A stretch of DNA of 64,000 bases from Schizochytrium sp. TIO01 (taxonomy: Eukaryota; Protista; Bigyra: Labyrinthulomycetes). The notes under the pieces are model-generated. The model had not been told where the DNA came from. It saw only the letters and a program-made list of their open reading frames with translations, and ran no database searches. Each line of letters begins with the position of its first letter. Position 1 is the stretch's first letter. Positions 27,901 to 41,672 of this stretch are shown one piece after another. The DNA is taken from positions 124,001 through 188,000 of the forward strand of contig SMSO01000032.1 of the NCBI GenBank assembly GCA_004764695.1, given 5' to 3'. A program made the translations under genes and the position numbers.

Positions 27901-30800
27901 GAGCCGAGAAAACTTAAAGGTCACAACTTCTCTTCTTCATCAAATTTTCAAAACATGTTAGCAAGATACGTAGGGATCTTAGTAGCATACGTAGATACTA
28001 CCCTCTCGAAAACAGAGCTTCAGAAAGAAGCTAAGAAAGAACTTGAACCACCAAAGAAAAGAACGATATCATCACACACCAGAAGAAAGGACTATGCTCA
28101 AAGTGCATGATTGAAATCCTCCATGATGAGGAAGTGACCATCATACCGCCTAATTTCCTAGCTTTCGAGTATTGCAGTAGTTGCCATGACAAATTGTCAA
28201 TCTACATTCGTAGCTCGCATGCCGTGGGTTCAATCTCTTGACATCTTGATAGCGCGAAGAAGGGTGCCAACTGGAGCTCAGAATAAGTAATTCAGAAGTG
28301 CGCACTTCCAGGCGGGTCTGCATGGCTTCCAGGCGGGCGTTTTCACTTCTTCCAGCACGCCATCGACAGCGACATCTTTCCAAGGCCAAGAGCAGTGAGA
28401 CGAACCTCGCTTTAAATTTACTACATAATACTCCGTGTCAGCTCTGTGAATCGCTGCTCATAAATCACAACTCCAGGGCTTGAGTATAGGCGAGCAGCCC
28501 GTTTTAGCACGACTACTACAATTGTTTTGACGACAGTCTAAGATGAAGTCGCTCCCCGTGCGCAATGTGCAAATAAATGCCTGGCTATTGATGTGAAGAA
28601 CGAGGAAAACTTGGAAAACTTGATAGCAGTCCAAGTATCTGACTTTGAGCCTTTAAGGGGGCCTTTCCAAATCAGGTACCTACATATTAGTAGCAACCTA
28701 TTCAAAGCAAACCAAGGTTCTTGAATGTTAATGAGCTTCCTTCTTGCTTTCCTTCAAGTTTGTACTAGTACTTAGATAGTAGGTAGCACTCGCTTAAAGG
28801 TGAATGATTACTTCCTTCTCATGTTTCCCTTCTTTTTGAACAAGCGCGAACTTTTCGGACATTGCTCGGGCGCCCGTGCTAAGCAGGATTTCTTTCGCCG
28901 CTCCAGCGGGACACAGACAGAGAACGATAAGGCTATGCCGAGGCCGAGCCTGTGGCTCTACGAGCAAGTCTTCGCGATGCACAAGCGTGACTTCGTGAGC
29001 TCGGCATTCGATTTTTGTGGTTACAGTCCTCGTGGTTAACGATGAAAATGCGCGAGAAATTCAAACGGAATTCGAAACCTCAAACTGCATTTCATCTCCC
29101 AATTAAACGCAGTCCGCAGTCGTTGTCTTCGCCGCGGCGTCCAGAGCGACGGAGTTGCAGGCTGGATGCGGCGCAGCGAGCATGGCGGCGAGCGTGGCGG
29201 CGGTCGGGGAATTATTGGCGCTCTTGGCAGTGCAGGCCTGGGCTTTTAGGGTATTCTTGTGCCCTCTCGGGACACTGCCCTCACGCACGGTCCCGACTTC
29301 GCTCCGCAGACGCGGCAGCCGGCATCCTCGAGGTCGATCCACAGCACCGCCTCGAGCTCTTCGCAAGCAGGCTGGGCAAGAAAGACTTTGACGTCGCGGC
29401 GTCTTCAGGTTTAGGATTTCCATTGTGCCACAATTCGCAATTTGAAATTCAAAATCACTCGAATCATTCAAATTTCAAATTTCGTTTTCAAGGCTACAAA
29501 GAAAAAAAGAAAAAAAAGTTTCCAAAATCCACATAACGAAGGAAGATTTCAAATCTTCAAATACCCTATTAGCGAACCTTGCCGCACGACGGCGACAGCA
29601 ACAACGACAACGAGGACGGCAACGACAACGGCGAGACCAGCAATGGCGTCTCGAGCTCCCCTCCCGGTGCCCCTATTTGCTCTTCTCTGTGTGCCGCTGC
29701 CGACAAATGCTCTGGACGTCATCCTGATGCTACGTCGGGTTTCAAATTCAAAGTCCTCCGGCTCACTGTTCTCGCTTCCTTCAATATTAATCTCTGTGGC
29801 CTCCAAAAATTAGGACCTAGAAGCCAAGGTCGATTACGCTACATCGAGCTTGAAGATCGAACCCATTGAGCGACCACTGATACGCTGCGCCAGTCAACTG
29901 GCGGAATCCAGAGCGCTTGTATTCAGAAGCTTGAGCAGGCTATTGTGATCCTCCTCTTTTCATGCTCTTGGCCTCTGTCCATTCTTCGTTCTTTTCAGAT
30001 TCTTTGGAAAGAGGATATGAGTTTTTTCCCCCTTTTCCACGATTTTAATATATATTTTTTATAATTAAGACGGACTTATTAAAAACATCATCGTCGATTG
30101 TTTTTAAAAACTTAATTAAAATACCCGTCTGTTCTCACTGAAAAGATGAATCGCACTTTCGCCGCGCATTAAGAAACCTTGGTCATTTTCCAAACGATTG
30201 AAAATCACGCTCACAAAGTGCACCAAGCCACGTCTATTCCCCGTTGACCCTTGCTCGATCCGCCTTCTCCCACCCACTCCCTTCAGCCTCTGCCTGGCCG
30301 GCCTCTCTCAATCCACGTCTCTTCTCCTGCCCAATGCGGGACCCTCGATCCATCGACCTCCCTCCCTCTCCACTCAACGCCTCCATTCCTATTACCCTCC
30401 TATCCTATTCCATAGCAGTCGAGGCTCTCTCTCTCTGGGCTTCTTTGTTTTGTTTCCTTTCCCTCTCTTACTTTCTTTCCCTGTGCTCACTTCTTCTTTA
30501 GGAGCTGCATAGCTGTTTCTCTATGGGGGCGTTTAGTTAGTTCATCATGGACCGACAAAGAATATGGATAAATGGAGAGATGAAGGAGTAATGATATATC
30601 TGATTTGAGCACCGTCTTGATCTCCTTCTGGTTTCGGATCATCCATATCCCTATCGCGGCGGCGCTGCTGGACGGCGATTGGTTTGTCTTCATAACAACT
30701 TGGCCGCACGCGAGCGGATCTGGGCCTGTTGCGCATACTTTGGTTGACTGAGAGAAGGACCGGTTCCTCTGTACGAGAGACGGATTCTTGAGCAAACAAG

Positions 30801-33731
30801 ATGCCAGTGGGTATCGTCGTGGTAGGCGCCACGGGCGCTCTGCCCATGAAGCGCATGTTCCCTGCGCTCTTTAGACTTTTCTGCACTGAAGTTGTTCGCG
30901 ATGTCACCATCGTCTGCACTTCTGAAGAGGAACACACGGACGAGTCTTTCCGCAAGGAGATCAGACCTGCTCTTGGTGCTGGAGACCTTGAGGGATTCCT
31001 CCTGCGATGCTCCTACGTGCAGGGCGACGCTTTTCAACCCGAGGTTGCTGAGATCATTGCCAAGAAGCTCGAAGGCCAGTCTCGAATTATGGTGTACATG
31101 AACCCTCAGGTCGAGATTGAGGACATCGAGGTTGATCCCCTCGCCGCCAAGCTCAAGCCCATGTGCAAGAAGGCTGGTGGATGGCTCCGCTGCGTTATCG
31201 AGAAACCTCTTCACTACGACGGAAGATCTTCGAAGGATCTTACTCGTAAGCTTCACAAGGCTTTTGGAGGTGAAGAGAACGTTTTCCGTCTTGACCATTT
31301 CATTGGAAAAGAAATGGTGCAGAATATCGCGGCCGTGCGTTTTGCCAACCGCTTCCTCGAACCCGCATGGAACTGCAGCAACATCAATGCCGTAGTCATC
31401 AGCTGTCGCGAAACCCAACTCATCTCTCCGGGCTCTAGCGCATCAATTTTTGATGAGCAGGGTATCGTTCGCGACCTTATCATCGACCACCTAATGCACA
31501 TTATGGCCCTTGTGGCAATGGAGACTCCCGTTGACCTTGCTGATGGGAAAAGTGTCAGCGATGAGGTAGCAAAGGTCCTCCGCTGCGTTGAGCCCGCCAA
31601 ACTTGAGGATACTGTACTTGGACAGTACAAGGGCTACTGCGACACAGAGGGCGTCAACGAGGAATCCATGACACCAACCTTTGCACTCTGCGTCTTGTAC
31701 ATCAACAATCCGCGTTGGCACGGAGTGCCCTTCATTCTCAAGGCAGGAAAGGGCCTGTACGAGCGTCGTACTGATGTTCGTGTGCAATTCAAGCCACCCC
31801 ACAACAAGCTCTTCCCGCCCAGTCGTGGCGGAGGACCCCTTAACGAACTGGTCATCCGAATTCAACCCAATAGTGACATCTACATGAAGATGATGCGCAA
31901 GGTGCCTGGTCTCAAGCTCAACGTTGCCGTGACCAAGCTCGATCTTCTCGGTAACGACCCGTCTGTTCTGTTGGACAGCGTCGACCGCCCGATGATGCGC
32001 AACGTCACCAGCCAGACTAACCTCCAGAACATGGCCGACAGATACAACTCACCGCTTACCCAAGGGCTCCTCGACGGCACCAATACTAATGCCGGTCTCA
32101 AGGAGTTTCCGCTTCTTAACGCATACTCTCCCGACTCATATGAGCGCCTCATCTATGATGTTGTGCAAAACGACAAGTCCTCGTTCATCCGTGAGGACGA
32201 GATCAACGCTATCTGGGACATCTTTGATCCGCTCATGCGTGACATTGAAGGCGGCGACGACTTTGATGGCGTCGAAGTCAACAAATATGTCATTGGCAGC
32301 CGTGGCCCTTCTGCCGCTTACTCACTGATGTCAACCGTTGGGTTTGTTGGCTACAAGCTTGAGTCTGAGCTTCTTGGTTTCAAGCCCAAATCTGTCTTCC
32401 AGGAGCTCACCTCTCAATTTAGTCTCACTGGATCTCAGATGGAGGAAATTGCTGCTCACTTTTTTCGTGAGATGCGCCGTGGTCTCCAGGGACTCCCCTC
32501 CACCATCAAGATGCTTCCTTCATACGTAACGGAGATCCCCACTAGCCGCGAGAAGGGTGTCTACTTTGCCCTCGACCTGGGTGGCACCAACTTTCGTGTC
32601 TCCCGATTTAGTTTTGATGGCCACGGTGTAGCCTGCATCACCGATGAGCGAAAGTACACTGTGCCTGATGAGATGATGACTGGTACTGCCGAGCAGCTCT
32701 TTGACTTCTTAGCAGAGTGCATCGCTTCGCTTGATACCGGCGCTGAAGATAAGGCTCATGGCCTCTATTACGGATTCACCTTCTCCTTCCCTGTTGAGCA
32801 GGACGCCATCGACCGCGGTACTCTGATTAGCTGGACAAAGGGTTTCACCACCTCTGGTGTTGAGGGCAAGGATGTTGTCGATCTCTTGCGTGATGCCTTC
32901 AAGCGCCGTGGCTTTGAGGGTGACATTACCGCTCTCGTCAACGATACCGTGGGTACACTCATTAGTGCTGCTTACACTGACCCCCGCACAATGATTGGCA
33001 TCATTCTCGGTACTGGTACCAATGCTGCATACCGTGAGAAGGTTGAGAACATTCTTAAGCTGCCTAAGGAGGTCCGCGATCGTGGCGGTGAGATGATCAT
33101 TAACACCGAGTGGGGTAACTTTGGTTCGAATGGAAAGATGCTCCCTACCACCGAGATTGATGAGGAGATCGACAGGAACTCCCGTAACCAGGGCAAGCAG
33201 TTCCTCGAGAAAATGATTTCTGGTATGTACCTTGGTGAAATGGTGCGTCTCTGCCTTGTGCGCATGTATGACGCCGGTGAGATCTGGCAAGGACCGGAGG
33301 CTGTGGTACCTGCGCACCTCAAGACCACCAACTCTTTCCCCAGCCGTTACCTCTCCGACATTGAGTACGACATGTCCGAGCAGCTCACTATTGTCCGCCG
33401 GATTGAAGATAGCTATGGCGTACAGGGGTCGCAGCTTGAGGACCGCATCAAGCTCAAGGAGGTGTGTGGTATGATTATTCAGCGCGCTGCTAAACTTACA
33501 GCATGTGCTATCGCTGCTTGTATTCGCCAAATTGGCACCAACGACCCTGAGCTTGTGGTCGGCATTGACGGTTCTGTTTTTGAGCACCACCCGTCATTCC
33601 GTCAGCGTCTTGCCACTGGCCTTGGTGAGCTTGCTGTTCAGGCCAATGTAATTCTTGCCAAGGACGGATCTGGTCAAGGTGCTGCGCTCATTTCTCACGG
33701 TGCCCTTGTGGCTCGTGGAAAGGCAAACTAA
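30801..33731 (+). CDS. Glucose-6-phosphate dehydrogenase-hexokinase fusion protein (976 aa)
   Basis: G6PD half: GATGAL, IEKP, RLDHFIGKE, GIVRD..DHL, LGQY, RWHGVPFILKAGK, ELVIRIQP, PDSYERLI. Hexokinase half: LDLGGTNFRV, GFTFSFP, WTKGF, VNDTVGTL, ILGTGTN, NTEWGNF, EKMISGMYLGE, DGSVF, DGSGQGAAL. No stop or frameshift between them. Confidence 0.95.
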   Translation: MPVGIVVVGATGALPMKRMFPALFRLFCTEVVRDVTIVCTSEEEHTDESFRKEIRPALGAGDLEGFLLRCSYVQGDAFQPEVAEIIAKKLEGQSRIMVYMNPQVEIEDIEVDPLAAKLKPMCKKAGGWLRCVIEKPLHYDGRSSKDLTRKLHKAFGGEENVFRLDHFIGKEMVQNIAAVRFANRFLEPAWNCSNINAVVISCRETQLISPGSSASIFDEQGIVRDLIIDHLMHIMALVAMETPVDLADGKSVSDEVAKVLRCVEPAKLEDTVLGQYKGYCDTEGVNEESMTPTFALCVLYINNPRWHGVPFILKAGKGLYERRTDVRVQFKPPHNKLFPPSRGGGPLNELVIRIQPNSDIYMKMMRKVPGLKLNVAVTKLDLLGNDPSVLLDSVDRPMMRNVTSQTNLQNMADRYNSPLTQGLLDGTNTNAGLKEFPLLNAYSPDSYERLIYDVVQNDKSSFIREDEINAIWDIFDPLMRDIEGGDDFDGVEVNKYVIGSRGPSAAYSLMSTVGFVGYKLESELLGFKPKSVFQELTSQFSLTGSQMEEIAAHFFREMRRGLQGLPSTIKMLPSYVTEIPTSREKGVYFALDLGGTNFRVSRFSFDGHGVACITDERKYTVPDEMMTGTAEQLFDFLAECIASLDTGAEDKAHGLYYGFTFSFPVEQDAIDRGTLISWTKGFTTSGVEGKDVVDLLRDAFKRRGFEGDITALVNDTVGTLISAAYTDPRTMIGIILGTGTNAAYREKVENILKLPKEVRDRGGEMIINTEWGNFGSNGKMLPTTEIDEEIDRNSRNQGKQFLEKMISGMYLGEMVRLCLVRMYDAGEIWQGPEAVVPAHLKTTNSFPSRYLSDIEYDMSEQLTIVRRIEDSYGVQGSQLEDRIKLKEVCGMIIQRAAKLTACAIAACIRQIGTNDPELVVGIDGSVFEHHPSFRQRLATGLGELAVQANVILAKDGSGQGAALISHGALVARGKAN

Positions 33732-35837
33732 TTTACATCTTTACTTACCTTTTTTTAAAACCTTTCTTTTATACAATTGAATTATTCCTAAAATTAAAAA
33801 CCTAATATTTTGATATATTCAATCCAGTTTTCTATAATTCTTGTTTCGTTTAGTTGGTTTAAATCTATAATCTATGTATCAGGACTATATGTTCCGAAGC
33901 ATCGTCCAGACCCCAGAGTGTTTCCATCACTGCTTGTAAGAATAACGAATCCCGCTACTGCTCACTCGTCACTGGAGCCTAACGCACCCCTGGCCAGTTT
34001 TCACTTGCATCATTACCTGGCACGCTCTGATCTTCAGGCAGTTCTAGATTGAGAAGAAAGAAACATAGTAGACGAAAAAAGAAGCATTGGTAGTAGGACC
34101 TCTCAAGAGTGCTTTTTCCTTTCTTTTTCCATTAATTTCTTTTCACTTTGAGATTCGAATGCTCGAATTAAATTCGACCATATTCATCTTCACAAGTAAC
34201 CTCCCTCAAGCCCCCTACGATGATTTTAGGATGGACGATGCGTCTCAAGCAATGATCCCAACTGTGAGCTACTAGTTATCACTCGCCATCGCTTTGAAGA
34301 GGTGTTTTCGCACCTTTTTTGTTTTAAAGAACCCCAAAGAACCGTAGTCGAACTAATGAGCATGGCTGTGGGTATTATTTAGGTTACAAGGGCAATATTA
34401 ATACCAGTGTTTCATTCTCAGCTGTGGTCGCCTGGCATCCTCATATGGGGAAACATTGGCAAGAAAGTGAGGAAAAGATCAGCTGTGGAATATTGCCGGA
34501 AAGCTCTACTTCGGCATCAGTTGCTTGCAAAATAACCGGCACAAGCATATAAAACCACAACAAAGGCATTTTTTTCTTTTAGATTTCAAAGTGACCAGAG
34601 AGGTATAAACCTCAATGAGACAATCTCTGATATGCTCAAAATCCATATTCCTTTCATCAGGTTAGAGAACTCATAAATTTGGTGCAGTTGTTCGTTCTTG
34701 CACCTGACCCCCATTTGACATATTTATACCGCTGCAGCTAACCATGTTCACCACAGAGTTACTTTACAATATACTTATCTCTGCAAGATCAGATCAAGGG
34801 CTGTGATTTCGACGTGAAAACACAAAATGGAATTGGTAATGACGCAAGTTGATCTGATCTAGCTTCATATGTTGCAACTCGACCACATTCATAAAGTGTC
34901 TTCGATTTATCTGACCAAACCTTCACGTTCTTTCATCTTCTCCACAATCGAATCACTCAAAGTGCGCAATTCTCAAAACAATTGAAAACTACAAAATGCA
35001 AAAATCTTCCACTAATAACGCCATTCCTACACCTTGCAACCAAACTCAATCTGAAATGCTTTATCCGCCCCAGTGCTGTCATGCCGCCTGTACGCTGACC
35101 TCTTGCAGCCCATTGCATCCTTGTATTTTCATTACGCTCTCTCCTTTGGCATGCTCGATTCCAATGTAGTACAAGCTCTACTTCTCCTGCATTCTCGCGC
35201 TCTCAATTATCTGACACCTGCTGTAACGTACCAACCTACCATACTCAACATTCACATGGAAACAATGTTCGGTTTCGTAACCTCTCATCTCCGTTACATC
35301 TTCAATAAGTGCTGATTCAAGACGCAAGGAGTTTATCCATAATTTGCCTCCCTGCGACACGCATTAAATTGGTGTTTAGGTTGATCACAGTCTTTGAAGT
35401 GCAACGACATGGCAGGGATCCACCAAATCGACGCAAGTGCCAAACGAAAGTGCCAAACGTAGCGTCGTCTCTTGGCTGGAGGTTGAACAAGTAGCTCTGA
35501 CCTAACGATCAGTAGTACCCAACTACTTGCACTCCTACTGAAGGCGCTAGCCACTGCTAACACATGGAAATGAACACCCATAGACATTAATTCAATTAAT
35601 TAGTATCAATCATTTGCTCTCCGAAGCAGCGACAAACGCAAATCTCTTGCTCTCCGCCGTTGCTCTTCGGGGGCGACTGTGCGCGGTTCCTGTCTTGCAA
35701 GACCTTTGCACGAGTGTGCAGGATAGGTGCGCGTGCGAGGGAGGTCGCTGTACCTGCTCGTTGTGTTACTGTGTGTGGCTTGCCACATAGGCGGAGTCTT
35801 GGAGACTATTGGATAGATCAGGCAGTGAGCAAGCACG

Positions 35838-37988
35838 ATGGCGGAGGTTGGTACCGCTGTTTCGGGGCGCTATGCGCACTTGGAGGCAAGCTTTGGAGCT
35901 GATCTTTTTGATCAGGTGCGCTCCTGTCGCGTATTGGTAGTGGGTTCTGGTGGTATTGGCGTCGAGATCCTCAAAAACCTCGTTATGTCCGGATTTTCTG
36001 ATATCGAGATTGTGGATCTTGACACTATCGATGTGTCGAACCTTAATCGCCAGTTTCTCTTTCGCAGCAAACACGTGGGGATGTCGAAAAGTCAGGTAGC
36101 GCGTGAAGTCGCCCTGCAGTTCAACCCCGACGCCAAAATTGTGGCTCATCATGGAAACGTCAAGGAGGAGCGCTTCGGAGTCAAATTCATCAGCAACTTT
36201 GACATCATTCTCAATGCGCTCGACAACGTCTCTGCTCGCCAGCATGTAAACCGCCTATGCCTTGCTGCAGGAAAGCCTCTTATTGACGCCGGAACGCAAG
36301 GATATCTTGGTCAGACCACTGTGCATGTCGGCAAGGAAACAGCGTGCTTCGACTGCGAGCCTAAGACTGAGAACAAGCGCACATTTGCTATCTGCACTAT
36401 CCGCAGCACACCAGATAAACCCGTGCACTGCATTGTTTGGGCTAAGGAACTTTTTAAACTCATGTTTGGCCATGCAGAAGAATCCATGCTTAGTGGCACT
36501 GAACCGGATGCTACTTCAGATAATACCGAAGGAGAGGCTGCTACGGAAGCCAAGGAAGAAGATGCTTCTTCCGCCGCTGCTGAGGCAAATGCGGACCAGG
36601 AAAGGGAACAGGAGATTCGTTCCCAGATTGTTGATGCCGTTGCAGCGAGGCCAGAGAACTTGGATGATAAAGACGCCCTCCGTGCCTATGCTCGCTCCGT
36701 CTTTGATGCTGTCTTCGACCACGAAATCCGTTTTAAATTGCAGCTCCGTAATGGATACAAGGGAGCCAACAAAAAGCCTTCACCTCTCACTTTTGACGAT
36801 GCTATGGCATCTGATGAATCGCCATCTTCAGGTTCTCCGAGCGGTCTTCGCGATCAGAGAATTTTGAGTCTGCACGAATGTACAGACTTGTTTGTGGATA
36901 CTATCATGACCCTGATGGGCCCGGAGCGCCGTAACACCCTTGGCGACATGGTCTTCGACAAGGATGATGCTCTAACTTTGCAATTTGTGACGGCTGCCTC
37001 AAACTTGCGAAGCCATTGCTTCAACATTGAGCGCAAGAGTCTTTGGGATACCAAGGGCATAGCCGGAAACATCATTCATGCTATCGCTACAACTAATGCA
37101 ATTGTGGCTGGTCTGCAGACTCTCGAGGCAATCAAGATTCTCGCTGCGCTCAAGCGAGTCTCCATCAAAAATTCTACCTGGACTGCCCCATCTGAGGAGG
37201 AGATGAAAGCTGATCCACCAAAGCTCACTCGCAACAGCACAGCCGTGTGGGTGGCCCGCGAGCCTGTGGGTCGTGGTTTTTTGCTTCAAGCTACTCAGCT
37301 GCCTGCACCCAACCCCAAATGCTTCTCTTGTGGTGATGCTCTCGTGATTCTTGCGGTGGATACCACGAAGTTCCTTTTTGGAGATCTCATTGATCGTGTG
37401 TTAAAGGGTCGTCTTGGAGTAAACCTGCCTAGTGTGATGTTTGGAACTTCGGAGTTATATGTAGAGGGAGATGGTCTCGATGAGGACGAAGTCGAGTTTT
37501 TCATGCAAAACAAACCCAAAGTTTTGATTGACAGTCCCGCAGGAGGTATCAAGGATGGTTCTATTCTTGAGATTGAGGACTTTTCGCAAAACATGAAATT
37601 TAAGATGCTTATTCAACAAAAGGTCTTTGATGCCGAGAAGAACCCGGACTTATTCGAAGTAGGAGGCGACGAGCCTGTCGTCGCCGAAGAGGACGATATT
37701 GCCCCAACAGAGGAAACAGCAGAGGTCTCTCAGGAGAGCACCTCCTCAGTTCAGACTACAGAAGTGAAAGCTGTGCTAAAGAGTGGCGATGGCAATGATG
37801 AGGTCATTGCAGTGGCCAGTGCAATCACAGAGTCGGCTCCCACAGATACCAAGAAACGCGCTCGTGAAGATAAAGACCATGGTTCGGAGAGCTCAAAACG
37901 ATCCAAGACGGATGACGAAGTTCCCGGCGCAGCCGTTGTAGTGGGCGGTGCTGATGACGACGATGACGATGTAGTTTTCATTGAATAA
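35838..37988 (+). CDS. UBA2: SUMO-activating enzyme subunit 2
   Basis: VVGSGGIG, DLDTIDVSNLNRQFLF, ALDN..AR, CFDC, CTIRSTP (catalytic Cys), AGNIIHAIATTNA, PNPKCFSC, basic NLS and acidic SIM-like tail DDDDDVVFIE. Confidence 0.95.
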   Translation: MAEVGTAVSGRYAHLEASFGADLFDQVRSCRVLVVGSGGIGVEILKNLVMSGFSDIEIVDLDTIDVSNLNRQFLFRSKHVGMSKSQVAREVALQFNPDAKIVAHHGNVKEERFGVKFISNFDIILNALDNVSARQHVNRLCLAAGKPLIDAGTQGYLGQTTVHVGKETACFDCEPKTENKRTFAICTIRSTPDKPVHCIVWAKELFKLMFGHAEESMLSGTEPDATSDNTEGEAATEAKEEDASSAAAEANADQEREQEIRSQIVDAVAARPENLDDKDALRAYARSVFDAVFDHEIRFKLQLRNGYKGANKKPSPLTFDDAMASDESPSSGSPSGLRDQRILSLHECTDLFVDTIMTLMGPERRNTLGDMVFDKDDALTLQFVTAASNLRSHCFNIERKSLWDTKGIAGNIIHAIATTNAIVAGLQTLEAIKILAALKRVSIKNSTWTAPSEEEMKADPPKLTRNSTAVWVAREPVGRGFLLQATQLPAPNPKCFSCGDALVILAVDTTKFLFGDLIDRVLKGRLGVNLPSVMFGTSELYVEGDGLDEDEVEFFMQNKPKVLIDSPAGGIKDGSILEIEDFSQNMKFKMLIQQKVFDAEKNPDLFEVGGDEPVVAEEDDIAPTEETAEVSQESTSSVQTTEVKAVLKSGDGNDEVIAVASAITESAPTDTKKRAREDKDHGSESSKRSKTDDEVPGAAVVVGGADDDDDDVVFIE

Positions 37989-38008: not shown

Positions 38009-40204
38009 TTAATCTTTTTCTGTACCGTCAACAGCAGCAGCAGCAGCAGCAGCAAGTGCCTCTCGCTTCGTCTCAATCTGCGAGGCAGACATTCCAGGAT
38101 CACCTGTGGCACCAAGTGACCGTAACTTTTCAAGCTGTGATTGAGCCATTTGTGCACGAAGCACGGCCACTTGCTCCTCAAGAGCATCAATGTGCATTTG
38201 CATCGCCGCCTCCTTACGCTTGCTACGCTTCTTTCGTTTCCCACGTTGAACGACTCGAGAGGGAGACACAACAGAAGACACCTGACTTGGAGAGAGCGGT
38301 CCTATGGCACTGCCGTGGCGGTGACTTCTTGGAGTCAACGAACTTGTTTGTACATCGAGGCGTCGCGGAGATCTTGAACCTAATGTGCCTTGACCGCGCC
38401 CACTGGATGTTCCAGGAGAGCCTCCTAAACCAGTTCTCGGGGAATGTGACCTTCCCGTCAAGTGTGGCGTATGCGGAGAGTGCGCTTCCCCATTATCTCT
38501 GCTCAGCGTAGAGGTGGTTTGCGCAGGGTATCCTGATTCTACTGGGTTTGATTTGAGGAGTTTGTACACCGAGGAGAGGCGATGAGGAGGGCATGATAGG
38601 ATTGTGCGCATGAATGGGTCTTCCTGAGCTTGTAACCTTGTTTCTACTTCTCGGACTAAGCGGTCTGTGTCACGACGAACACCATCTTCGACAACATCGC
38701 CATGCTTTGCTTGATTGGCGGCACGCGCCAGAACGGCATCCACATGTGATGGGTTGCGACTAGCGTACGCAATCCACCACTTTGAGTTTTCATAGTCTAA
38801 GGGATCATTCTCCCTGAATGCATTTCCTAAGCCTAGTGAATCATGGTTATCCATACTCTGCCAAGGAGGCCTTTGTGCCTGCAATTTGCGAATATCTCTT
38901 TCCTCGTGGCCCACCTGAACTCGCCACCACTCTTTCCCCACCTGTGCGTTATCTAAAGCTGCCAGATGTGCGTTCCTTGCTTCCGTATAAACACTCTGGT
39001 CTCGGGAAAGTGGCCATGGTGTGTGTTTTGATGTCTTGCGCTGGCGTCGTATGTTGATGGCACTTGTGCTGTCGTCTCCTTCATTGGGAGTTTGATTTTC
39101 ATTTCCATTGCCTTCATTTTCAGCCAAATTTTGGTCATCCGCAATCTTTCCATCATAAGATGAGAGCGGGAGCTTTAGCTGCTCAAGTCGTGCGCAGAGT
39201 TTATTAGTACGGTTCAAAATACGTGCACGTTCGCGCTCATGAGAACGCATTACTGTGTCACGTGAACTAAAATGCGCCCAGCGAATTTGAATTTCACGGT
39301 GCCCTTCCATGAGAGCTTGAAACTTTTCATGCGTGCTGAAACGCCCATTGTCAAGCATTCGGTCATGTGCCTCTCGCGTGAGTTCATCGTATAGCTTGTG
39401 AAGCATCTTGAGGTCGCTGTCATTTGTTCTCCCATCCAGATTGCTCGCATCCTCCGCATCCTCTTTTTCAATTCCCATTTCAGTCTCGCCGGGTTGTTTT
39501 ATCAGCCCACCGTCATTTTCCTCATCTTCCTCACCATGAGGTGATTCATATGACTCTTCCAGGACATCTGTGGACAGTCGTAAGCCTTTGTCAGCAAGTT
39601 TTTTGCGTACGGCTCGCGCCTCCGTTCGTTGCAAACGCCTTTGACGTTGTGACCGCCACGCTCGTTGAATAACTCTAGACGATTTGTTTTTGCGACGCTC
39701 TTCCCATGCCAAGAGCTTCTCAGGTTTCACTTGGCGCATCATGGCAAGCTCCAACTGACGTCTTTGAATACGCTCATGGCGTGCTGCACGCTCTCGTTCG
39801 GCGGCCTGCCCTGGTCTCTCCTGAAGCACTAATCGTACTTGGTAACCCCTATCTGACTCGCCAATGTCTTGCCATTGCTGAGCAGCTTCCTCGCCACCTT
39901 TGCGCGCATCTACACGAGCGTGTCCAACTCCTGCGACACGAATTCTAAGCTCCCGTTTCTCAGATGTGTCATTTTCGTCGCGATCATTTGCAATTTCGTC
40001 ATTCCATGCTAGATGCCGCGTTAATTTCCAGCGAAGGTCGCCCACAGGTTCTCGCACAGGGTCCACGGCATCAACATCTTCGCGGGCTCGTGAAAGTCCT
40101 CCTTCATGCCCACGAACCCCTACGCTGACCAGAGAAAGTCTCACGCGAGGCGGCTCTGCTCCAGCGAAGCCCCTGGCCTGGACGCCCACCACGTACCAGT
40201 CCAT
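38009..40204 (-). CDS. IQ-motif protein similar to the C-terminal half of IQCB1/NPHP5 (ciliary transition zone)
   Basis: RRQLELAMMRQVKPEKL..KSSRVIQRAWR and LSRDQSVYTEARNAHLAAL..EWWR resemble, from memory, IQCB1 segments LQLSMLEIVHPGQV..KSALIIQKHWR and LSRSRPVAAKAKQAHLTTL..PWWK. First ATG at 40204. Confidence 0.7.
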   Translation of the reverse strand: MDWYVVGVQARGFAGAEPPRVRLSLVSVGVRGHEGGLSRAREDVDAVDPVREPVGDLRWKLTRHLAWNDEIANDRDENDTSEKRELRIRVAGVGHARVDARKGGEEAAQQWQDIGESDRGYQVRLVLQERPGQAAERERAARHERIQRRQLELAMMRQVKPEKLLAWEERRKNKSSRVIQRAWRSQRQRRLQRTEARAVRKKLADKGLRLSTDVLEESYESPHGEEDEENDGGLIKQPGETEMGIEKEDAEDASNLDGRTNDSDLKMLHKLYDELTREAHDRMLDNGRFSTHEKFQALMEGHREIQIRWAHFSSRDTVMRSHERERARILNRTNKLCARLEQLKLPLSSYDGKIADDQNLAENEGNGNENQTPNEGDDSTSAINIRRQRKTSKHTPWPLSRDQSVYTEARNAHLAALDNAQVGKEWWRVQVGHEERDIRKLQAQRPPWQSMDNHDSLGLGNAFRENDPLDYENSKWWIAYASRNPSHVDAVLARAANQAKHGDVVEDGVRRDTDRLVREVETRLQAQEDPFMRTILSCPPHRLSSVYKLLKSNPVESGYPAQTTSTLSRDNGEAHSPHTPHLTGRSHSPRTGLGGSPGTSSGRGQGTLGSRSPRRLDVQTSSLTPRSHRHGSAIGPLSPSQVSSVVSPSRVVQRGKRKKRSKRKEAAMQMHIDALEEQVAVLRAQMAQSQLEKLRSLGATGDPGMSASQIETKREALAAAAAAAVDGTEKD

Positions 40205-41672
40205 CACAACGAAGAACCAACCACTGCCCTGCGTATAAACACAAGCGTCAACGCCAGGCAAAACTGGGATACAGAATTAGAGCTCGTAGAGACCGCCACG
40301 CGCACAACGCAGCGTCGAGGCGGTCTATGGGTTTGATGTCAGTATTGCCTTCTCTGTTATTCTGATGCAAAAGCACTTTTTATTCTCTACTCTGTAGTAC
40401 TAGGTAGGCAATAGGGTAGGAGTGTCTACGATTATGTAATAGTTACAACGTTCAACGGGAAACGAAAAGAAGTTTGAGGGTGTTTTAATAATCCTCAAGA
40501 ACGGCCAACAGGAAATCAACTCTTCGTGTGATTGATATTGAGATACAGCATTGGCTATTGAAAGAGTTTATATAAGGGCTGTTTGACGAGCGGGTCTTGC
40601 AGAGCCTTCCTTTACTGACCAGGTTGATTAGTGAAAACTTGCGCTTGTGAGAATTTAGGAAATGGTGTTGAATGTTGAAGGCAAAATGGATGAGAACAAG
40701 CAAATGCAACTATGCGAAATATTGTAAACCAAGTATAAGAAACATGATTATAATGATACAAAACAAAGAAAAGAATTACCAGCGCACCATTGCATACTAT
40801 CGAAAGCTCAATTCTCTCGAAATCTTGTGCAAACACTCCAAATACGTTTTCTGTCTCCCCGGCTTGTTTATGACTTTCCATAAATTTATCCCTTCCTCCT
40901 CTGCAAGCATAATCTTAAATCAATGCTTACCCCTGAGGTTATGCTGCTCAAAAGAAGAGTCATGTCCCGAAATTTGACAACCTAAAGCCTTTACATCATT
41001 TCCAAACCTGCTGAAGTTCCACCCTAATTTCAACCCCGCTTGTCTTTCCTTCAAGCTCGATAAATTCCTGTGAAACAACATCATCTGTTATTTACCTAGT
41101 CCTGTTCAATGTAGCAATCTCTTTCCTGACCTGCTCCAAGTCGATCCCAATTGCGTTGTTGTCGCTGCTTTTTTGCCTTAGTTTTGACTATTTACCTTTA
41201 GTAAAGTCCTACTGTAAAACAGCGCTGCACCAAAATGTAAAACGGGAGCTGAGGAGCCCAAGTATTGTGGTTAAGACTATCTATAGATAGACTAAGACCG
41301 GTTTCATGATGACAAAGACCAAAAGCGACTGAGATAATCAAGAAACGAGAAAACCTTCGTTGTCGCTGCAATCCTATCTCGATCCTCTAGGAGGATTCCG
41401 AGAGGCCTTGGCGGGCACGGCAGCAGCTTTCGCTGCCTGCGTGTCTCGCGCTCCTCGTCCTCGCGGCGTCCGTTTCGAACGCTGCGCTCGTAGCGGTCTG
41501 CGTAGACGACGGTTGGATGCCAAAGGCTATATTTTTTTCTGCCTTCGTATACGCTGATTGCTCTCACAGTCTCTCAGCGAGTTGACAAAACTTTCTGCGA
41601 TTGAGCAAGACATTGAGTGACAATATTCTCTCGTGTGAAACCTGGCCCTTCAAATAAGGCTAGATTTACACA

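What the first reader, a model, noticed from the sequence alone, without database searches (positions are those of the whole stretch)
30801..33731. Single-polypeptide G6PD-hexokinase fusion: a possible glucose-to-pentose-phosphate gateway enzyme
Seen: one intronless 976-aa ORF with a full G6PD domain (about aa 1-515) followed by a full hexokinase domain (about aa 530-970), with similar biased codon usage across the junction. Established: the two enzymes act consecutively (glucose to G6P to 6-phosphogluconolactone plus NAD(P)H). The G6PD fusions I know of are with downstream PPP enzymes (6PGL in Plasmodium, Giardia and H6PD; 6PGD in a diatom), not with the upstream kinase. Inference: the fusion could channel newly phosphorylated glucose into the oxidative PPP instead of glycolysis, or couple G6P sensing to kinase control. 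Either would matter for reductant supply in an oleaginous protist. I cannot confirm that it is undescribed.
Basis: partly seen in the sequence, partly recalled or inferred. Interest (0 to 1): 0.92.

Follow-up and report, generated by a model that had tools for sequence, protein, structure and literature searches.

The report
Hexokinase fused to degenerate G6PD domain
A marine oil-producing protist (Aurantiochytrium) makes its only classical hexokinase as one protein joined to a glucose-6-phosphate-dehydrogenase-like half; the fusion is real, appears to be transcribed as one unit, is shared by related protists and was not found described in the papers searched, but the dehydrogenase half has lost the usual NADP-binding signature, so it probably binds or senses glucose-6-phosphate and does not make NADPH.

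Summary
Observation confirmed. Window 30801-33731 (+) is one uninterrupted 976-aa ORF: G6PD_N + G6PD_C (aa 6-516), a roughly 17-aa linker, then Hexokinase_1 + Hexokinase_2 (aa 534-964).

Transcript-like contigs from four public runs cover the whole ORF without joints. The identical protein is also in an MMETSP transcriptome.

The architecture, always G6PD then HK, occurs in 50 proteins in hand. Named carriers are Labyrinthulomycetes (Hondaea, Mucochytrium, Aplanochytrium) and the bicosoecid Cafeteria. Nine literature searches found no description of it.

New here:
- This is the only Hexokinase-family gene in the 64-Mb genome.
- The genome also has a separate canonical G6PD (100% identical to Aurantiochytrium sp. 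SD116 G6PD), an ER H6PD-like gene, and separate 6PGL and 6PGD.
- In the labyrinthulomycete fusions the G6P-binding and catalytic-dyad residues are conserved. The dinucleotide fingerprint, Arg72 (Glu42 here), ALPP and the GRGG loop are lost and differ between orthologues.
- Cafeteria-type fusions keep every canonical motif. A third group has lost the G6P site too. All groups keep an intact HK half.

Best reading (about 0.5): an active hexokinase carrying a G6PD-derived, non-NADP+ G6P-binding module. Channelling by an active, perhaps NAD+-using, G6PD half remains possible (about 0.27). No biochemistry exists.

The parts
30801..33731 (+). Complete intronless coding sequence of the 976-aa G6PD-like/hexokinase fusion protein, stop codon included
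   Evidence: The identical protein is P0001 in JGI, Logan and MMETSP.
30151..33822 (+). Extent of the longest transcript-like contig (X1, 3673 nt). It implies a 5' UTR of up to about 650 nt (a second run's contig starts at 30643) and a 3' UTR of about 70-90 nt. No joints were seen.
   Evidence: table 8. All four runs have zero coverage from 33902 to 35200.
30816..31325 (+). G6PD_N Rossmann-type domain (aa 6-175). It scores low for the family (98 bits, against 195 bits for the genome's canonical G6PD).
   Evidence: The AF2 model keeps the beta-alpha-beta pattern.
30825..30845 (+). Degenerate dinucleotide fingerprint GATGALP (aa 9-15). The canonical motif is GASGDLA, human residues 38-44.
   Evidence: The role of the fingerprint is taken from PMC11448927.
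30924..30926 (+). Glu42, at the position of human Arg72 / L. mesenteroides Arg46, the residue next to the 2'-phosphate of NADP+. It starts a run of three Glu (aa 42-44).
   Evidence: Alignment to human G6PD. Column 277 is R in 100% of canonical G6PDs and reads E,E,K,D,D,G,R in class B. PMC11448927.
31098..31109 (+). MNPQ (aa 100-103) in place of the canonical (L/I)A(L/I)PP motif
31200..31214 (+). EKPLH (aa 134-138), the counterpart of the EKPxG motif. Glu, Lys (human K171) and Pro are kept.
   Evidence: PMC11448927
31287..31313 (+). RLDHFIGKE (aa 163-171), the counterpart of RIDHYLGKE. Asp165 (human D200), His166 (H201) and Lys170 (K205) are kept.
   Evidence: PMC11448927
31332..31949 (+). G6PD_C core (aa 178-383), the best-conserved part of the G6PD half. 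It holds Glu204 (human E239), Asp225 (D258), His230 (H263, the general base), Lys317 (K360), Arg322 (R365) and Gln355 (Q395).
31419..31454 (+). LISPGSSASIFD (aa 207-218), which replaces the invariant FGTEGRGGYFD loop (human R246 is Ser here, Y249 is Ile)
31950..32117 (+). Lineage-specific insert of 56 aa (aa 384-439) inside G6PD_C. It is variable or absent in orthologues and is predicted disordered.
   Evidence: pLDDT is below 50 over aa 384-442.
32118..32348 (+). C-terminal part of G6PD_C (aa 440-516)
32349..32399 (+). Junction and short linker (aa 517-533). It holds the motif G(F/Y)xx(Y/H)KLxSELxG, found in most class-B members, which leads into the first helix of the hexokinase half.
   Evidence: pLDDT is below 50 over aa 521-528.
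32400..32975 (+). Hexokinase_1 domain (aa 534-725) with LDLGGTNFR (aa 591-599), Thr679-Lys680, and Asn714-Asp715 (the catalytic base)
32994..33692 (+). Hexokinase_2 domain (aa 732-964) with GTGTN (aa 737-741), Glu770, Glu803, DGS (aa 923-925) and DGSGQGAA (aa 955-962)

Best explanation
Shown: window 30801-33731 is a genuine single-exon gene of an Aurantiochytrium-type thraustochytrid, apparently transcribed as one unit. It encodes one 976-aa protein with a G6PD-derived N-terminal half joined by a roughly 17-residue linker to a complete hexokinase. The hexokinase half keeps every catalytic, glucose-binding and ATP-binding motif, and it is the only Hexokinase-family gene in the genome. Shown: the fusion is old, is shared with other Labyrinthulomycetes and with Cafeteria, and is compatible with a single origin. 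Shown by comparison: in the labyrinthulomycete branch the G6PD half keeps the glucose-6-phosphate pocket and the His/Asp dyad under strong constraint. Its coenzyme-site signatures (fingerprint, Arg72, ALPP, GRGG loop) are lost and drift between orthologues. Each of these organisms also keeps a separate canonical G6PD. Inferred: the protein works as the cell's classical ATP-dependent hexokinase, and its G6PD-derived half no longer acts as an NADP+-dependent dehydrogenase. Instead it serves as a G6P-binding module, either a product sensor or allosteric regulator or a G6P-dependent oligomerisation scaffold for the kinase. This would be functionally analogous to the non-catalytic, G6P-binding N-terminal half of vertebrate hexokinase I. 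On this reading, NADPH for lipid synthesis comes from the separate canonical G6PD and 6PGD.
For: Gene and expression: ORF and domains; contigs spanning UTR to UTR without joints in four runs; the identical protein in MMETSP. Hexokinase competence: alignment to human HK2, HK1 and GCK with all motifs present; these motifs are invariant or nearly invariant in 27 fused proteins. Sole HK-family gene: PF00349 and PF03727 each hit only this locus, and PF02685 hits nothing. Separate oxidative PPP: a canonical G6PD with every motif that is 100% identical to Aurantiochytrium sp. SD116 G6PD. Standalone orthologues exist in Hondaea, Mucochytrium and Aplanochytrium, which also carry the fusion. 6PGD and 6PGL are separate genes. 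Coenzyme-site decay: 157 columns are at least 90% invariant in 52 canonical G6PDs. Cafeteria-type fusions keep 97.8% of those cells and labyrinthulomycete fusions 68.7%. In aa 2-130 only 7 of 27 such columns are kept in at least 80% of class B, against 55 of 76 in the G6PD_C core. The fingerprint reads GATGALP, DATGELA, GAFGDTT, GASLDVA, GADLEPA, GGSSSYA or GGTSRVA in different orthologues. The Arg72 position reads E,E,K,D,D,G,R. By contrast D200, H201, E239, H263 and K360 equivalents are kept in 10 of 10, K171 in 9 of 10, and K205 and Q395 in 8 of 10. Rate reversal: the G6PD half is less conserved than the HK half in 36 of 36 class-B pairs (median -10.6 points) and more conserved in 45 of 45 class-A pairs (+15.9). 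The loss is concentrated in the Rossmann domain: 37.8% mean identity against 61.8% for the G6PD_C core and about 60% for HK. Class C (P0049, P0084, P0096) has lost the G6P-site residues as well, yet keeps the domain and an intact HK. This indicates a role for the module that does not need dehydrogenase chemistry.
Against: No biochemical data exist for any member. The window protein itself still has both glycines of the fingerprint. A Glu at the Arg72 position is what an NAD+-preferring Rossmann site would have. The catalytic dyad and Lys135 are strictly conserved, which would also fit retained catalysis. The contact roles of several lost motifs (ALPP, GRGG loop) rest on my recollection of the human and L. 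mesenteroides structures, not on a test here. No defined interface between the halves was predicted: AF2 pTM is 0.53 with a low-confidence linker. Regulation of the kinase by the module is pure inference. The genome also encodes a ROK kinase and an ADP-dependent glucokinase, so this is not necessarily the only glucose kinase.
Confidence: 0.5

Rival explanations
1. True bifunctional enzyme. The G6PD half is still an active dehydrogenase, perhaps NAD+-preferring or of relaxed specificity because of Glu42. The fusion would pass newly made G6P directly to 6-phosphogluconolactone (substrate channelling or proximity).
For: The catalytic His230/Asp165 dyad, Lys135 and all G6P-phosphate ligands are conserved across class B. 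The window protein keeps Gly9 and Gly12 of the fingerprint. An acidic residue at the Arg72 position occurs in 4 of 7 class-B members, which is the classical NAD+ signature (established knowledge of Rossmann folds). The two reactions are consecutive. Cafeteria-type relatives have a fully canonical G6PD half, so the ancestral fusion was probably bifunctional.
Against: The fingerprint is not conserved even between the two closest orthologues (GATGALP here, DATGELA in Hondaea at 79% identity). The second glycine is Leu or Ser in four other orthologues. ALPP and the GRGG loop are lost. The Rossmann domain evolves much faster than the rest of the protein. A canonical G6PD coexists in every named class-B organism. 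Class C shows that the module is kept even without a G6P site.
Confidence: 0.27
2. Purely structural module. The G6PD-derived half binds no ligand in a functionally relevant way and survives only as a dimerisation or tetramerisation scaffold, or as a localisation scaffold, for the hexokinase.
For: G6PDs are obligate dimers or tetramers through the beta+alpha domain (PMC11448927), and that domain is the best-conserved part here. Class C keeps the domain after losing both ligand sites.
Against: In class B the G6P-contacting residues and the catalytic dyad are conserved at or near 10 of 10. A mere scaffold would not require this. Several active-site-adjacent positions changed once and were then fixed (N262 to D in 10 of 10, F173 to L in 9 of 10, Y202 to F in 9 of 10). 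This suggests a maintained pocket.
Confidence: 0.13
3. Polyprotein. The fusion is translated as one chain and then cleaved into separate G6PD-like and hexokinase proteins, as has been suspected for some diatom metabolic fusions.
For: Kroth et al. 2008 mention evidence that some diatom fusion proteins may be cleaved after translation (PMC2173943). The linker region has low predicted confidence.
Against: The linker is very short and carries a motif conserved across most class-B members that runs straight into the first HK helix. No protease-site evidence was found. Cleavage would not explain why the domain order and the fusion persist through deep divergence.
Confidence: 0.06
4. Artefact. Two adjacent genes were merged by mis-assembly or by a lost stop codon in this assembly.
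For: None found.
Against: The same uninterrupted ORF is in independent assemblies and runs from 11 studies. The same architecture is seen in 50 proteins from genomes, transcriptomes and metagenomes.
Confidence: 0.01

Closest known systems
G6PD-6PGL bifunctional enzymes (Plasmodium GluPho, vertebrate H6PD, and others; Stover et al. 2011, PMC3148214)
   Same: G6PD is fused in one polypeptide to a neighbouring enzyme of hexose-phosphate metabolism. Such fusions arose repeatedly in protists.
   Different: In those enzymes the partner is the downstream lactonase and the G6PD half is catalytically active with a canonical coenzyme site. Here the partner is the upstream kinase and the coenzyme site is degenerate. 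That survey lists no fusion with hexokinase.
G6PDH/6PGDH fusion of the diatom Phaeodactylum tricornutum (protein 54663; Kroth et al. 2008, PMC2173943)
   Same: It is a stramenopile cytosolic fusion of G6PD with another enzyme of the same pathway, with a short spacer.
   Different: The partner is 6PGD. Diatoms have bacterial-type glucokinase and no hexokinase. This genome has no PF02685 glucokinase, and its only HK-family gene is the fusion.
Vertebrate 100-kDa hexokinases, especially hexokinase I (structures 1HKB, 1CZA, 1BG3)
   Same: A catalytic hexokinase domain is preceded in the same chain by a domain of similar size. In HK I that N-terminal domain is non-catalytic and binds G6P to regulate the enzyme (established knowledge). 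The HK half here aligns over its whole length with each half of HK1 and HK2.
   Different: The vertebrate N-half is a duplicated hexokinase. Here the N-half derives from G6PD, an unrelated fold. Regulation is inferred here, not shown.
Cafeteria-type (class A) G6PD-hexokinase fusions, e.g. Cafeteria roenbergensis KAA0148987.1 (P0085)
   Same: They have the same domain order and a short linker. A single clade of all fused HK halves (p-AU 0.44) and of all fused G6PD halves (p-AU 0.37) is not rejected.
   Different: Class A keeps 97.8% of the canonical invariant G6PD positions, including GASGDLAKKK, GYARS, A(L/I)PP, EKPFG and a G(T/V/I)(E/A)(G/S)R(G/A)G(Y/F)F(D/N/E) loop. Its G6PD half evolves more slowly than its HK half. 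These proteins are likely true bifunctional enzymes. They are uncharacterised and are annotated only as 'hypothetical protein' or 'G6PD'.

Membership tests
Glucose-6-phosphate dehydrogenase (EC 1.1.1.49 type, Pfam G6PD_N + G6PD_C) | Significant match to both Pfam domains | tested here: met
   G6PD_N 98.4 bits (cut-off 22.1) and G6PD_C 249.5 bits (cut-off 27). Best PDB relatives are human G6PD chains at E=4e-77.
Glucose-6-phosphate dehydrogenase (EC 1.1.1.49 type, Pfam G6PD_N + G6PD_C) | Dinucleotide-binding fingerprint GxxGDLx (human residues 38-44) | tested here: not met
   The sequence is GATGALP: Asp42 is Ala and Ala44 is Pro. The motif is also broken in different ways in the orthologues. 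Motif definition from PMC11448927.
Glucose-6-phosphate dehydrogenase (EC 1.1.1.49 type, Pfam G6PD_N + G6PD_C) | Arg at the 2'-phosphate position (human Arg72, L. mesenteroides Arg46) | tested here: not met
   Glu42 stands here. The column is Arg in 100% of 52 canonical sequences and in 1 of 7 class-B members.
Glucose-6-phosphate dehydrogenase (EC 1.1.1.49 type, Pfam G6PD_N + G6PD_C) | EKPxG motif with Lys171 and the cis-proline | tested here: inconclusive
   The sequence is EKPLH. Glu, Lys and Pro are kept, Phe is Leu and Gly is His.
Glucose-6-phosphate dehydrogenase (EC 1.1.1.49 type, Pfam G6PD_N + G6PD_C) | Substrate motif RIDHYLGKE (Asp200, His201, Lys205) and the general base His263 | tested here: met
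   RLDHFIGKE keeps Asp165, His166 and Lys170. His230 sits in RDLIIDHLMH. All are conserved in 8-10 of 10 class-B members.
Glucose-6-phosphate dehydrogenase (EC 1.1.1.49 type, Pfam G6PD_N + G6PD_C) | G6P-dependent reduction of NADP+ (enzyme activity) | not testable with these tools
   This needs the recombinant protein. No published assay of any G6PD-HK fusion was found.
Hexokinase family (EC 2.7.1.1, Pfam Hexokinase_1 + Hexokinase_2) | Both Pfam domains over their full length | tested here: met
   225 and 246 bits, covering profile positions 3-201 of 201 and 2-239 of 242. Human HK2 and HK1 match at E about 1e-180 and GCK at 1e-93.
Hexokinase family (EC 2.7.1.1, Pfam Hexokinase_1 + Hexokinase_2) | Catalytic Asp, hexose-binding residues (T/K, N, E, E) and the ATP phosphate and adenosine motifs | tested here: met
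   Present are LDLGGTNFR (aa 591-599), T679-K680, N714-D715, GTGTN (aa 737-741), E770, E803, DGS (aa 923-925) and DGSGQGAA (aa 955-962). They are invariant or nearly so in 27 fused proteins. The roles of these residues come from established HK/GCK structures.
G6PD-hexokinase fusion clade of basal heterotrophic stramenopiles (defined here) | Domain order G6PD_N-G6PD_C-HK_1-HK_2 with a short linker. The HK half groups with other fused HKs. | tested here: met
   All 50 two-half proteins have this order. The window's HK half lies in a starred clade (96-98) with class B and C. One clade of all fused halves is not rejected.
Vertebrate-type 100-kDa hexokinase (tandem HK-HK) | N-terminal regulatory half homologous to hexokinase | tested here: not met
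   The N-half is G6PD-like, not HK-like. The resemblance is functional analogy only.

The most novel reading that the evidence does not exclude
The G6PD-derived half is a pseudo-dehydrogenase that evolved into a glucose-6-phosphate sensor. It would allosterically control, or set the oligomeric state of, the cell's only classical hexokinase. This would be a convergent solution, on an unrelated fold, to the G6P-binding regulatory N-half of vertebrate hexokinase I. The family would then show the whole trajectory: bifunctional enzyme (Cafeteria type), then sensor-kinase (thraustochytrids), then ligand-blind scaffold (class C).
Probability: 0.35. Interest if true: 0.85.

Novelty: new variant of a known kind. 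Interest (0 to 1): 0.66.

Why it matters
Thraustochytrids such as Aurantiochytrium are industrial DHA and squalene producers grown on very high glucose.

- Annotation and expression studies. Engineering and transcriptome papers treat 'HK' and 'G6PD' as separate genes and read G6PD expression as NADPH supply (for example PMC12272968). This locus is annotated in relatives as either 'G6PD' or 'hexokinase'. It can therefore be miscounted as an NADPH source although its coenzyme site looks defunct.
- Control of glucose entry. If the G6PD-derived half regulates the only classical hexokinase, it is a control point for glucose entry in these organisms.
- Evolution. This would be a previously undescribed partner for G6PD fusions. 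It is also a rare case where one fusion family displays intact, half-degenerate and fully degenerate states of a domain, which is useful for studying how pseudoenzymes arise.
- Cafeteria-type members. They are candidates for a genuine hexokinase-G6PD bifunctional enzyme, a natural version of the classic coupled assay pair.

Tried and rejected
- Complex prediction on the N-half (aa 1-525) against the HK half (aa 526-976) returned 'no answer' (score 0.00, controls not run). It is not evidence either way.
- AF2 of the full length with a 27-sequence alignment gave two well-folded halves (mean pLDDT 80.9) but pTM of only 0.53 and a low-confidence linker. No defined inter-domain geometry could be claimed.
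The genomic context and source organisms of the environmental fused proteins could not be obtained.
- The organism behind P0017 (TSA GECG01002386) could not be identified from the paper library.
- Nine literature searches for any description of a natural G6PD-hexokinase fusion found only coupled-assay mentions and papers on other fusions. The library excludes most subscription journals, so 'undescribed' is provisional.
- Artefactual gene merge: rejected.
- An upstream coding exon or targeting peptide: rejected. A stop lies 3 codons upstream of the ATG, contigs show no joints, and Hondaea starts at the same residue.
- The bacterial glucokinase family is absent from the genome.
- Read laying used assembled contigs only, so internal transcription starts, relative expression and strand could not be assessed.


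Full report
**1.
- Window 30801-33731 (+) is a single ATG-initiated ORF of 976 codons.
- Pfam finds four domains in the order G6PD_N (aa 6-175), G6PD_C (aa 178-383 plus a second stretch), Hexokinase_1 (aa 534-725) and Hexokinase_2 (aa 732-964). All score far above the curated cut-offs.
- The open frame extends only three codons upstream of the ATG.
- GC content is flat across the ORF and falls right after the stop. Codon usage is similar in the two halves.
- The neighbours are unrelated housekeeping genes: a PP2A-A-like HEAT protein upstream and a SUMO-E1 (UBA2-like) gene downstream.

**2. It appears to be transcribed as one unit.**
- The exact 976-aa protein is on record in JGI, Logan and the MMETSP transcriptome collection.
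- 24 public runs from 11 studies hold the stretch. I laid four of them, from four studies.
- Run X1 has a 3673-nt contig covering 30151-33822. Run X4 has a 3161-nt contig covering 30643-33803. The contigs of X2 and X7 end at 33762 and 33756.
- There are no joints and no indels, and no run has any coverage from 33902 to 35200. In X1 and X4 the upstream gene sits on a separate contig of roughly ten-fold lower depth.
- This is the pattern of transcript assemblies, although the record only guesses that these runs are RNA.
- Contigs cannot exclude an additional internal HK-only transcript.

**3. Organism and genomic setting.**
- The window is G000:C31:124001-188000 of a 64-Mb, 37-contig genome.
- The genome's canonical G6PD is 100% identical to the G6PD of Aurantiochytrium sp. 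SD116. The fusion is 79% identical to that of Hondaea fermentalgiana. The organism is therefore an Aurantiochytrium-type thraustochytrid.
- Six-frame Pfam searches of the whole genome find Hexokinase_1 and Hexokinase_2 only at this locus. They find no bacterial-type glucokinase.
- A ROK-family kinase and an ADP-dependent glucokinase exist elsewhere.
- G6PD_C hits three genes:
  - a canonical 532-aa G6PD carrying every textbook motif (L001);
  - this fusion;
  - a 531-aa H6PD-like protein with an N-terminal hydrophobic leader and a C-terminal HDEL (L003).
- 6PGD and 6PGL are separate genes. A complete conventional oxidative PPP therefore exists without the fusion.

**4. The architecture is a lineage trait, not a singleton.**
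- Word-indexed and exhaustive HMMER searches, plus a profile search, recovered 50 proteins with both halves. The order is always G6PD then HK, with a short linker.
- Named carriers are Hondaea fermentalgiana, Mucochytrium quahogii (MMETSP transcript, 'type:complete'), Aplanochytrium stocchinoi (all Labyrinthulomycetes) and Cafeteria roenbergensis/burkhardae, a bicosoecid. The rest are environmental or unnamed.
- The oomycete, diatom, plant, animal and fungal G6PDs among the hits listed do not carry a hexokinase half.
- Database names are inconsistent: 'G6PD', 'hexokinase', 'hexokinase/glucose-6-phosphate 1-dehydrogenase' or 'hypothetical protein'.
- Nine full-text searches found no paper describing the fusion. 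The dedicated survey of G6PD fusions mentions hexokinase only as the preceding pathway step.

**5. The hexokinase half is intact.** It aligns end to end with human HK2, HK1 and glucokinase (E 1e-180 to 1e-93). It carries LDLGGTNFR, T679-K680, N714-D715, GTGTN, E770, E803, DGS and DGSGQGAA. These positions are invariant or nearly invariant in all 27 aligned fused proteins.

**6. The G6PD half is not a canonical G6PD.** Aligned to human G6PD, the window protein shows two patterns.
- Kept:
  - Glu-Lys-Pro of EKPxG;
  - Asp165, His166 and Lys170 (human D200, H201, K205);
  - Glu204, Asp225 and His230 (the general base, H263);
  - Lys317, Arg322 and Gln355.
- Changed:
  - GATGALP stands for the GxxGDLx fingerprint;
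  - Glu42-Glu-Glu stands where Arg72-Ser-Arg sits;
  - MNPQ stands for ALPP;
  - GSSASIFD stands for GRGGYFD.
- The roles of the fingerprint, Arg72, Lys171, Asp200, His201, Lys205 and His263 are taken from a 2024 structural review (PMC11448927). The roles of ALPP and the GRGG loop are from my memory and are treated only as 'invariant family motifs'.
I confirm it and extend it below.

**7. Comparative test.** I aligned the G6PD halves of fused proteins with 37 standalone G6PDs. 157 columns are at least 90% invariant in the 52 canonical sequences.
- **Class A** (Cafeteria plus environmental relatives, and P0017) keeps 97.8% of these cells.
- **Class B** (the window and 9 labyrinthulomycete orthologues) keeps 68.7%, and the losses are not random.
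  - In aa 2-130 only 7 of 27 invariant columns are kept in at least 80% of class B. In the G6PD_C core 55 of 76 are kept.
  - The G6P and catalytic positions are kept in 8-10 of 10 members.
  - The coenzyme-site positions are not just changed but differ between orthologues:
    - the fingerprint reads GATGALP, DATGELA, GAFGDTT, GASLDVA, GADLEPA, GGSSSYA or GGTSRVA;
    - the Arg72 position reads E,E,K,D,D,G,R;
    - the Arg246 position is never Arg.
  - The closest orthologue (Hondaea) has Asp at the first glycine. Two others have Leu at the second glycine.
  - Some pocket-adjacent positions changed once and then stayed fixed: N262 to D in 10 of 10, F173 to L in 9 of 10, and Y202 to F in 9 of 10.
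- **Class C** (P0049, P0084, P0096) has also lost the counterparts of Lys171, His201, Lys360 and Gln395, and no canonical Lys205 is seen. It still keeps the domain and an intact HK.

**8. Rates.**
- In all 36 class-B pairs the G6PD half is less conserved than the HK half (median -10.6 identity points). In all 45 class-A pairs it is more conserved (+15.9).
- By region, class B shows 37.8% (Rossmann), 61.8% (G6PD_C core), 43.3% (C-tail) and 58-62% (HK). Class A shows 47.9, 64.4, 62.1 and 42.6%.
- So in the labyrinthulomycete branch constraint was relaxed on the coenzyme domain and the tail, but not on the substrate-binding/dimerisation core.
- Each named class-B organism also has a standalone canonical G6PD: Hondaea 82%, Mucochytrium 60% and Aplanochytrium 55% identical to the window genome's copy.

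**9. Phylogeny (quick IQ-TREE, LG+C20).**
- G6PD halves: class A is one starred clade inside canonical eukaryotic G6PDs. Class B is a long-branch clade.
- HK halves: class A is a clade (support 99). Class B and class C together form a clade (96-98), with class C nested in two places. A few apparently standalone HKs (P0091, P0093, P0103) also sit inside it.
- Holding all fused halves as one clade is not rejected, for HK (delta lnL 2.05, p-AU 0.44) or for G6PD (delta lnL 3.63, p-AU 0.37).
- Together with the identical domain order and junction, one ancient fusion is the simplest reading, but it is not proven.

**10. Structure.**
- AF2 with 27 sequences gives mean pLDDT 80.9 with both halves well folded.
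- The 56-aa insert (aa 384-442) and the linker (aa 521-528) have low confidence, and pTM is 0.53.
- The insert is specific to the Aurantiochytrium/Hondaea/P0003 subgroup and is variable.
- The linker carries a motif found in most class-B members, G(F/Y)xx(Y/H)KLxSELxG, which leads into the first HK helix.

**11. Interpretation.**
- Shown: the gene, its transcript-like coverage, its phyletic spread, an intact kinase half that is the sole HK-family gene, a conserved G6P pocket, and a decayed and drifting coenzyme site beside a separate canonical G6PD.
- Inferred (about 0.5): the protein is the cell's classical hexokinase. Its N-half is a G6P-binding, non-NADP+ module that acts as a sensor, regulator or ligand-dependent scaffold, analogous to the N-half of vertebrate HK I.
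- Main rival (about 0.27): the N-half is still an active, perhaps NAD+-using, dehydrogenase and the fusion channels G6P. This is probably true for class A and cannot be excluded here, because the window protein keeps both fingerprint glycines and the catalytic dyad.
- Minor rivals: a pure scaffold (about 0.13), a cleaved polyprotein (about 0.06) and an artefact (about 0.01).

**12. Novelty and score.**
- Fusions of G6PD with pathway neighbours, and hexokinases with a regulatory second half, are both known kinds.
- A G6PD-hexokinase fusion, and its apparent conversion into a pseudo-dehydrogenase module, was not found described in the literature I could search.
- I rate it a new variant of a known kind, with interest 0.66.

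**Limits.** There is no biochemistry. The RNA status of the runs is guessed. The trees are quick searches with long branches. The literature library omits most subscription journals.

Noticed in passing
L003:1441-3036 (-) = G000:C24, about 2245900-2247500: A third G6PD-family gene encodes a 531-aa H6PD-like protein. It has an N-terminal hydrophobic leader, GSTGNLA, a divergent substrate motif (LVDHYMGK) and a C-terminal HDEL, and it has no lactonase domain. It is likely an ER-luminal hexose-6-phosphate dehydrogenase. An earlier scan note, s1-839391, describes the same thing.
   Followed up: partly
L001:868-2466 (+) = G000:C30, about 3496700-3498300: This is the canonical cytosolic-type G6PD (532 aa, all motifs present). 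It is 100% identical to the UniRef entry for Aurantiochytrium sp. SD116 G6PD, which identifies the genome as an Aurantiochytrium of that type.
   Followed up: yes
L007 (G000:C24:1381642-1382589) and L008 (G000:C35:1523727-1524995): The genome holds a ROK-family sugar kinase (386-aa frame) and an ADP-dependent glucokinase (519-aa frame). These are possible alternative routes of glucose phosphorylation beside the fusion.
   Followed up: no
proteins P0049, P0084, P0096 (not in the window): These 'class C' fused proteins have a G6PD-like half that has lost both the coenzyme-site and the G6P-site residues, while the hexokinase half is intact. They nest in two places inside the labyrinthulomycete HK clade, which suggests repeated further decay of the domain.
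   Followed up: partly
proteins P0091, P0093, P0103 (not in the window): These are apparently complete standalone hexokinases (464-477 aa, starting with Met) that fall inside the class B/C fused-HK clade. They may reflect fission or loss of the G6PD-like half, or gene models started at an internal Met.
   Followed up: no
protein P0231 (CAE7915165.1, 'G6PD [Symbiodinium sp. KB8]'): This protein sits in the same 90%-identity cluster as the Cafeteria roenbergensis fusion proteins. It is probably Cafeteria contamination in that Symbiodinium assembly, not a dinoflagellate gene.
   Followed up: no
window 38009-40261 (-): A 750-aa ORF with no Pfam match at E<=0.001, lying downstream of the UBA2-like gene (35838-37988 +).
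   Followed up: no
window 30725 and 30077, 30531, 30590: Differences between strains lie in the 5' UTR and upstream region. C>T at 30725 appears in three of four runs, and three further changes appear only in run X7. No differences were reported inside the coding sequence.
   Followed up: no
proteins P0267, P0287, P0293 (oomycetes): These oomycete G6PD entries are joined to unrelated domains (PF08123, PF02390, ankyrin/ArfGAP/PH) and labelled 'Multifunctional fusion protein'. They look like merged gene models and are unrelated to the HK fusion.
   Followed up: no
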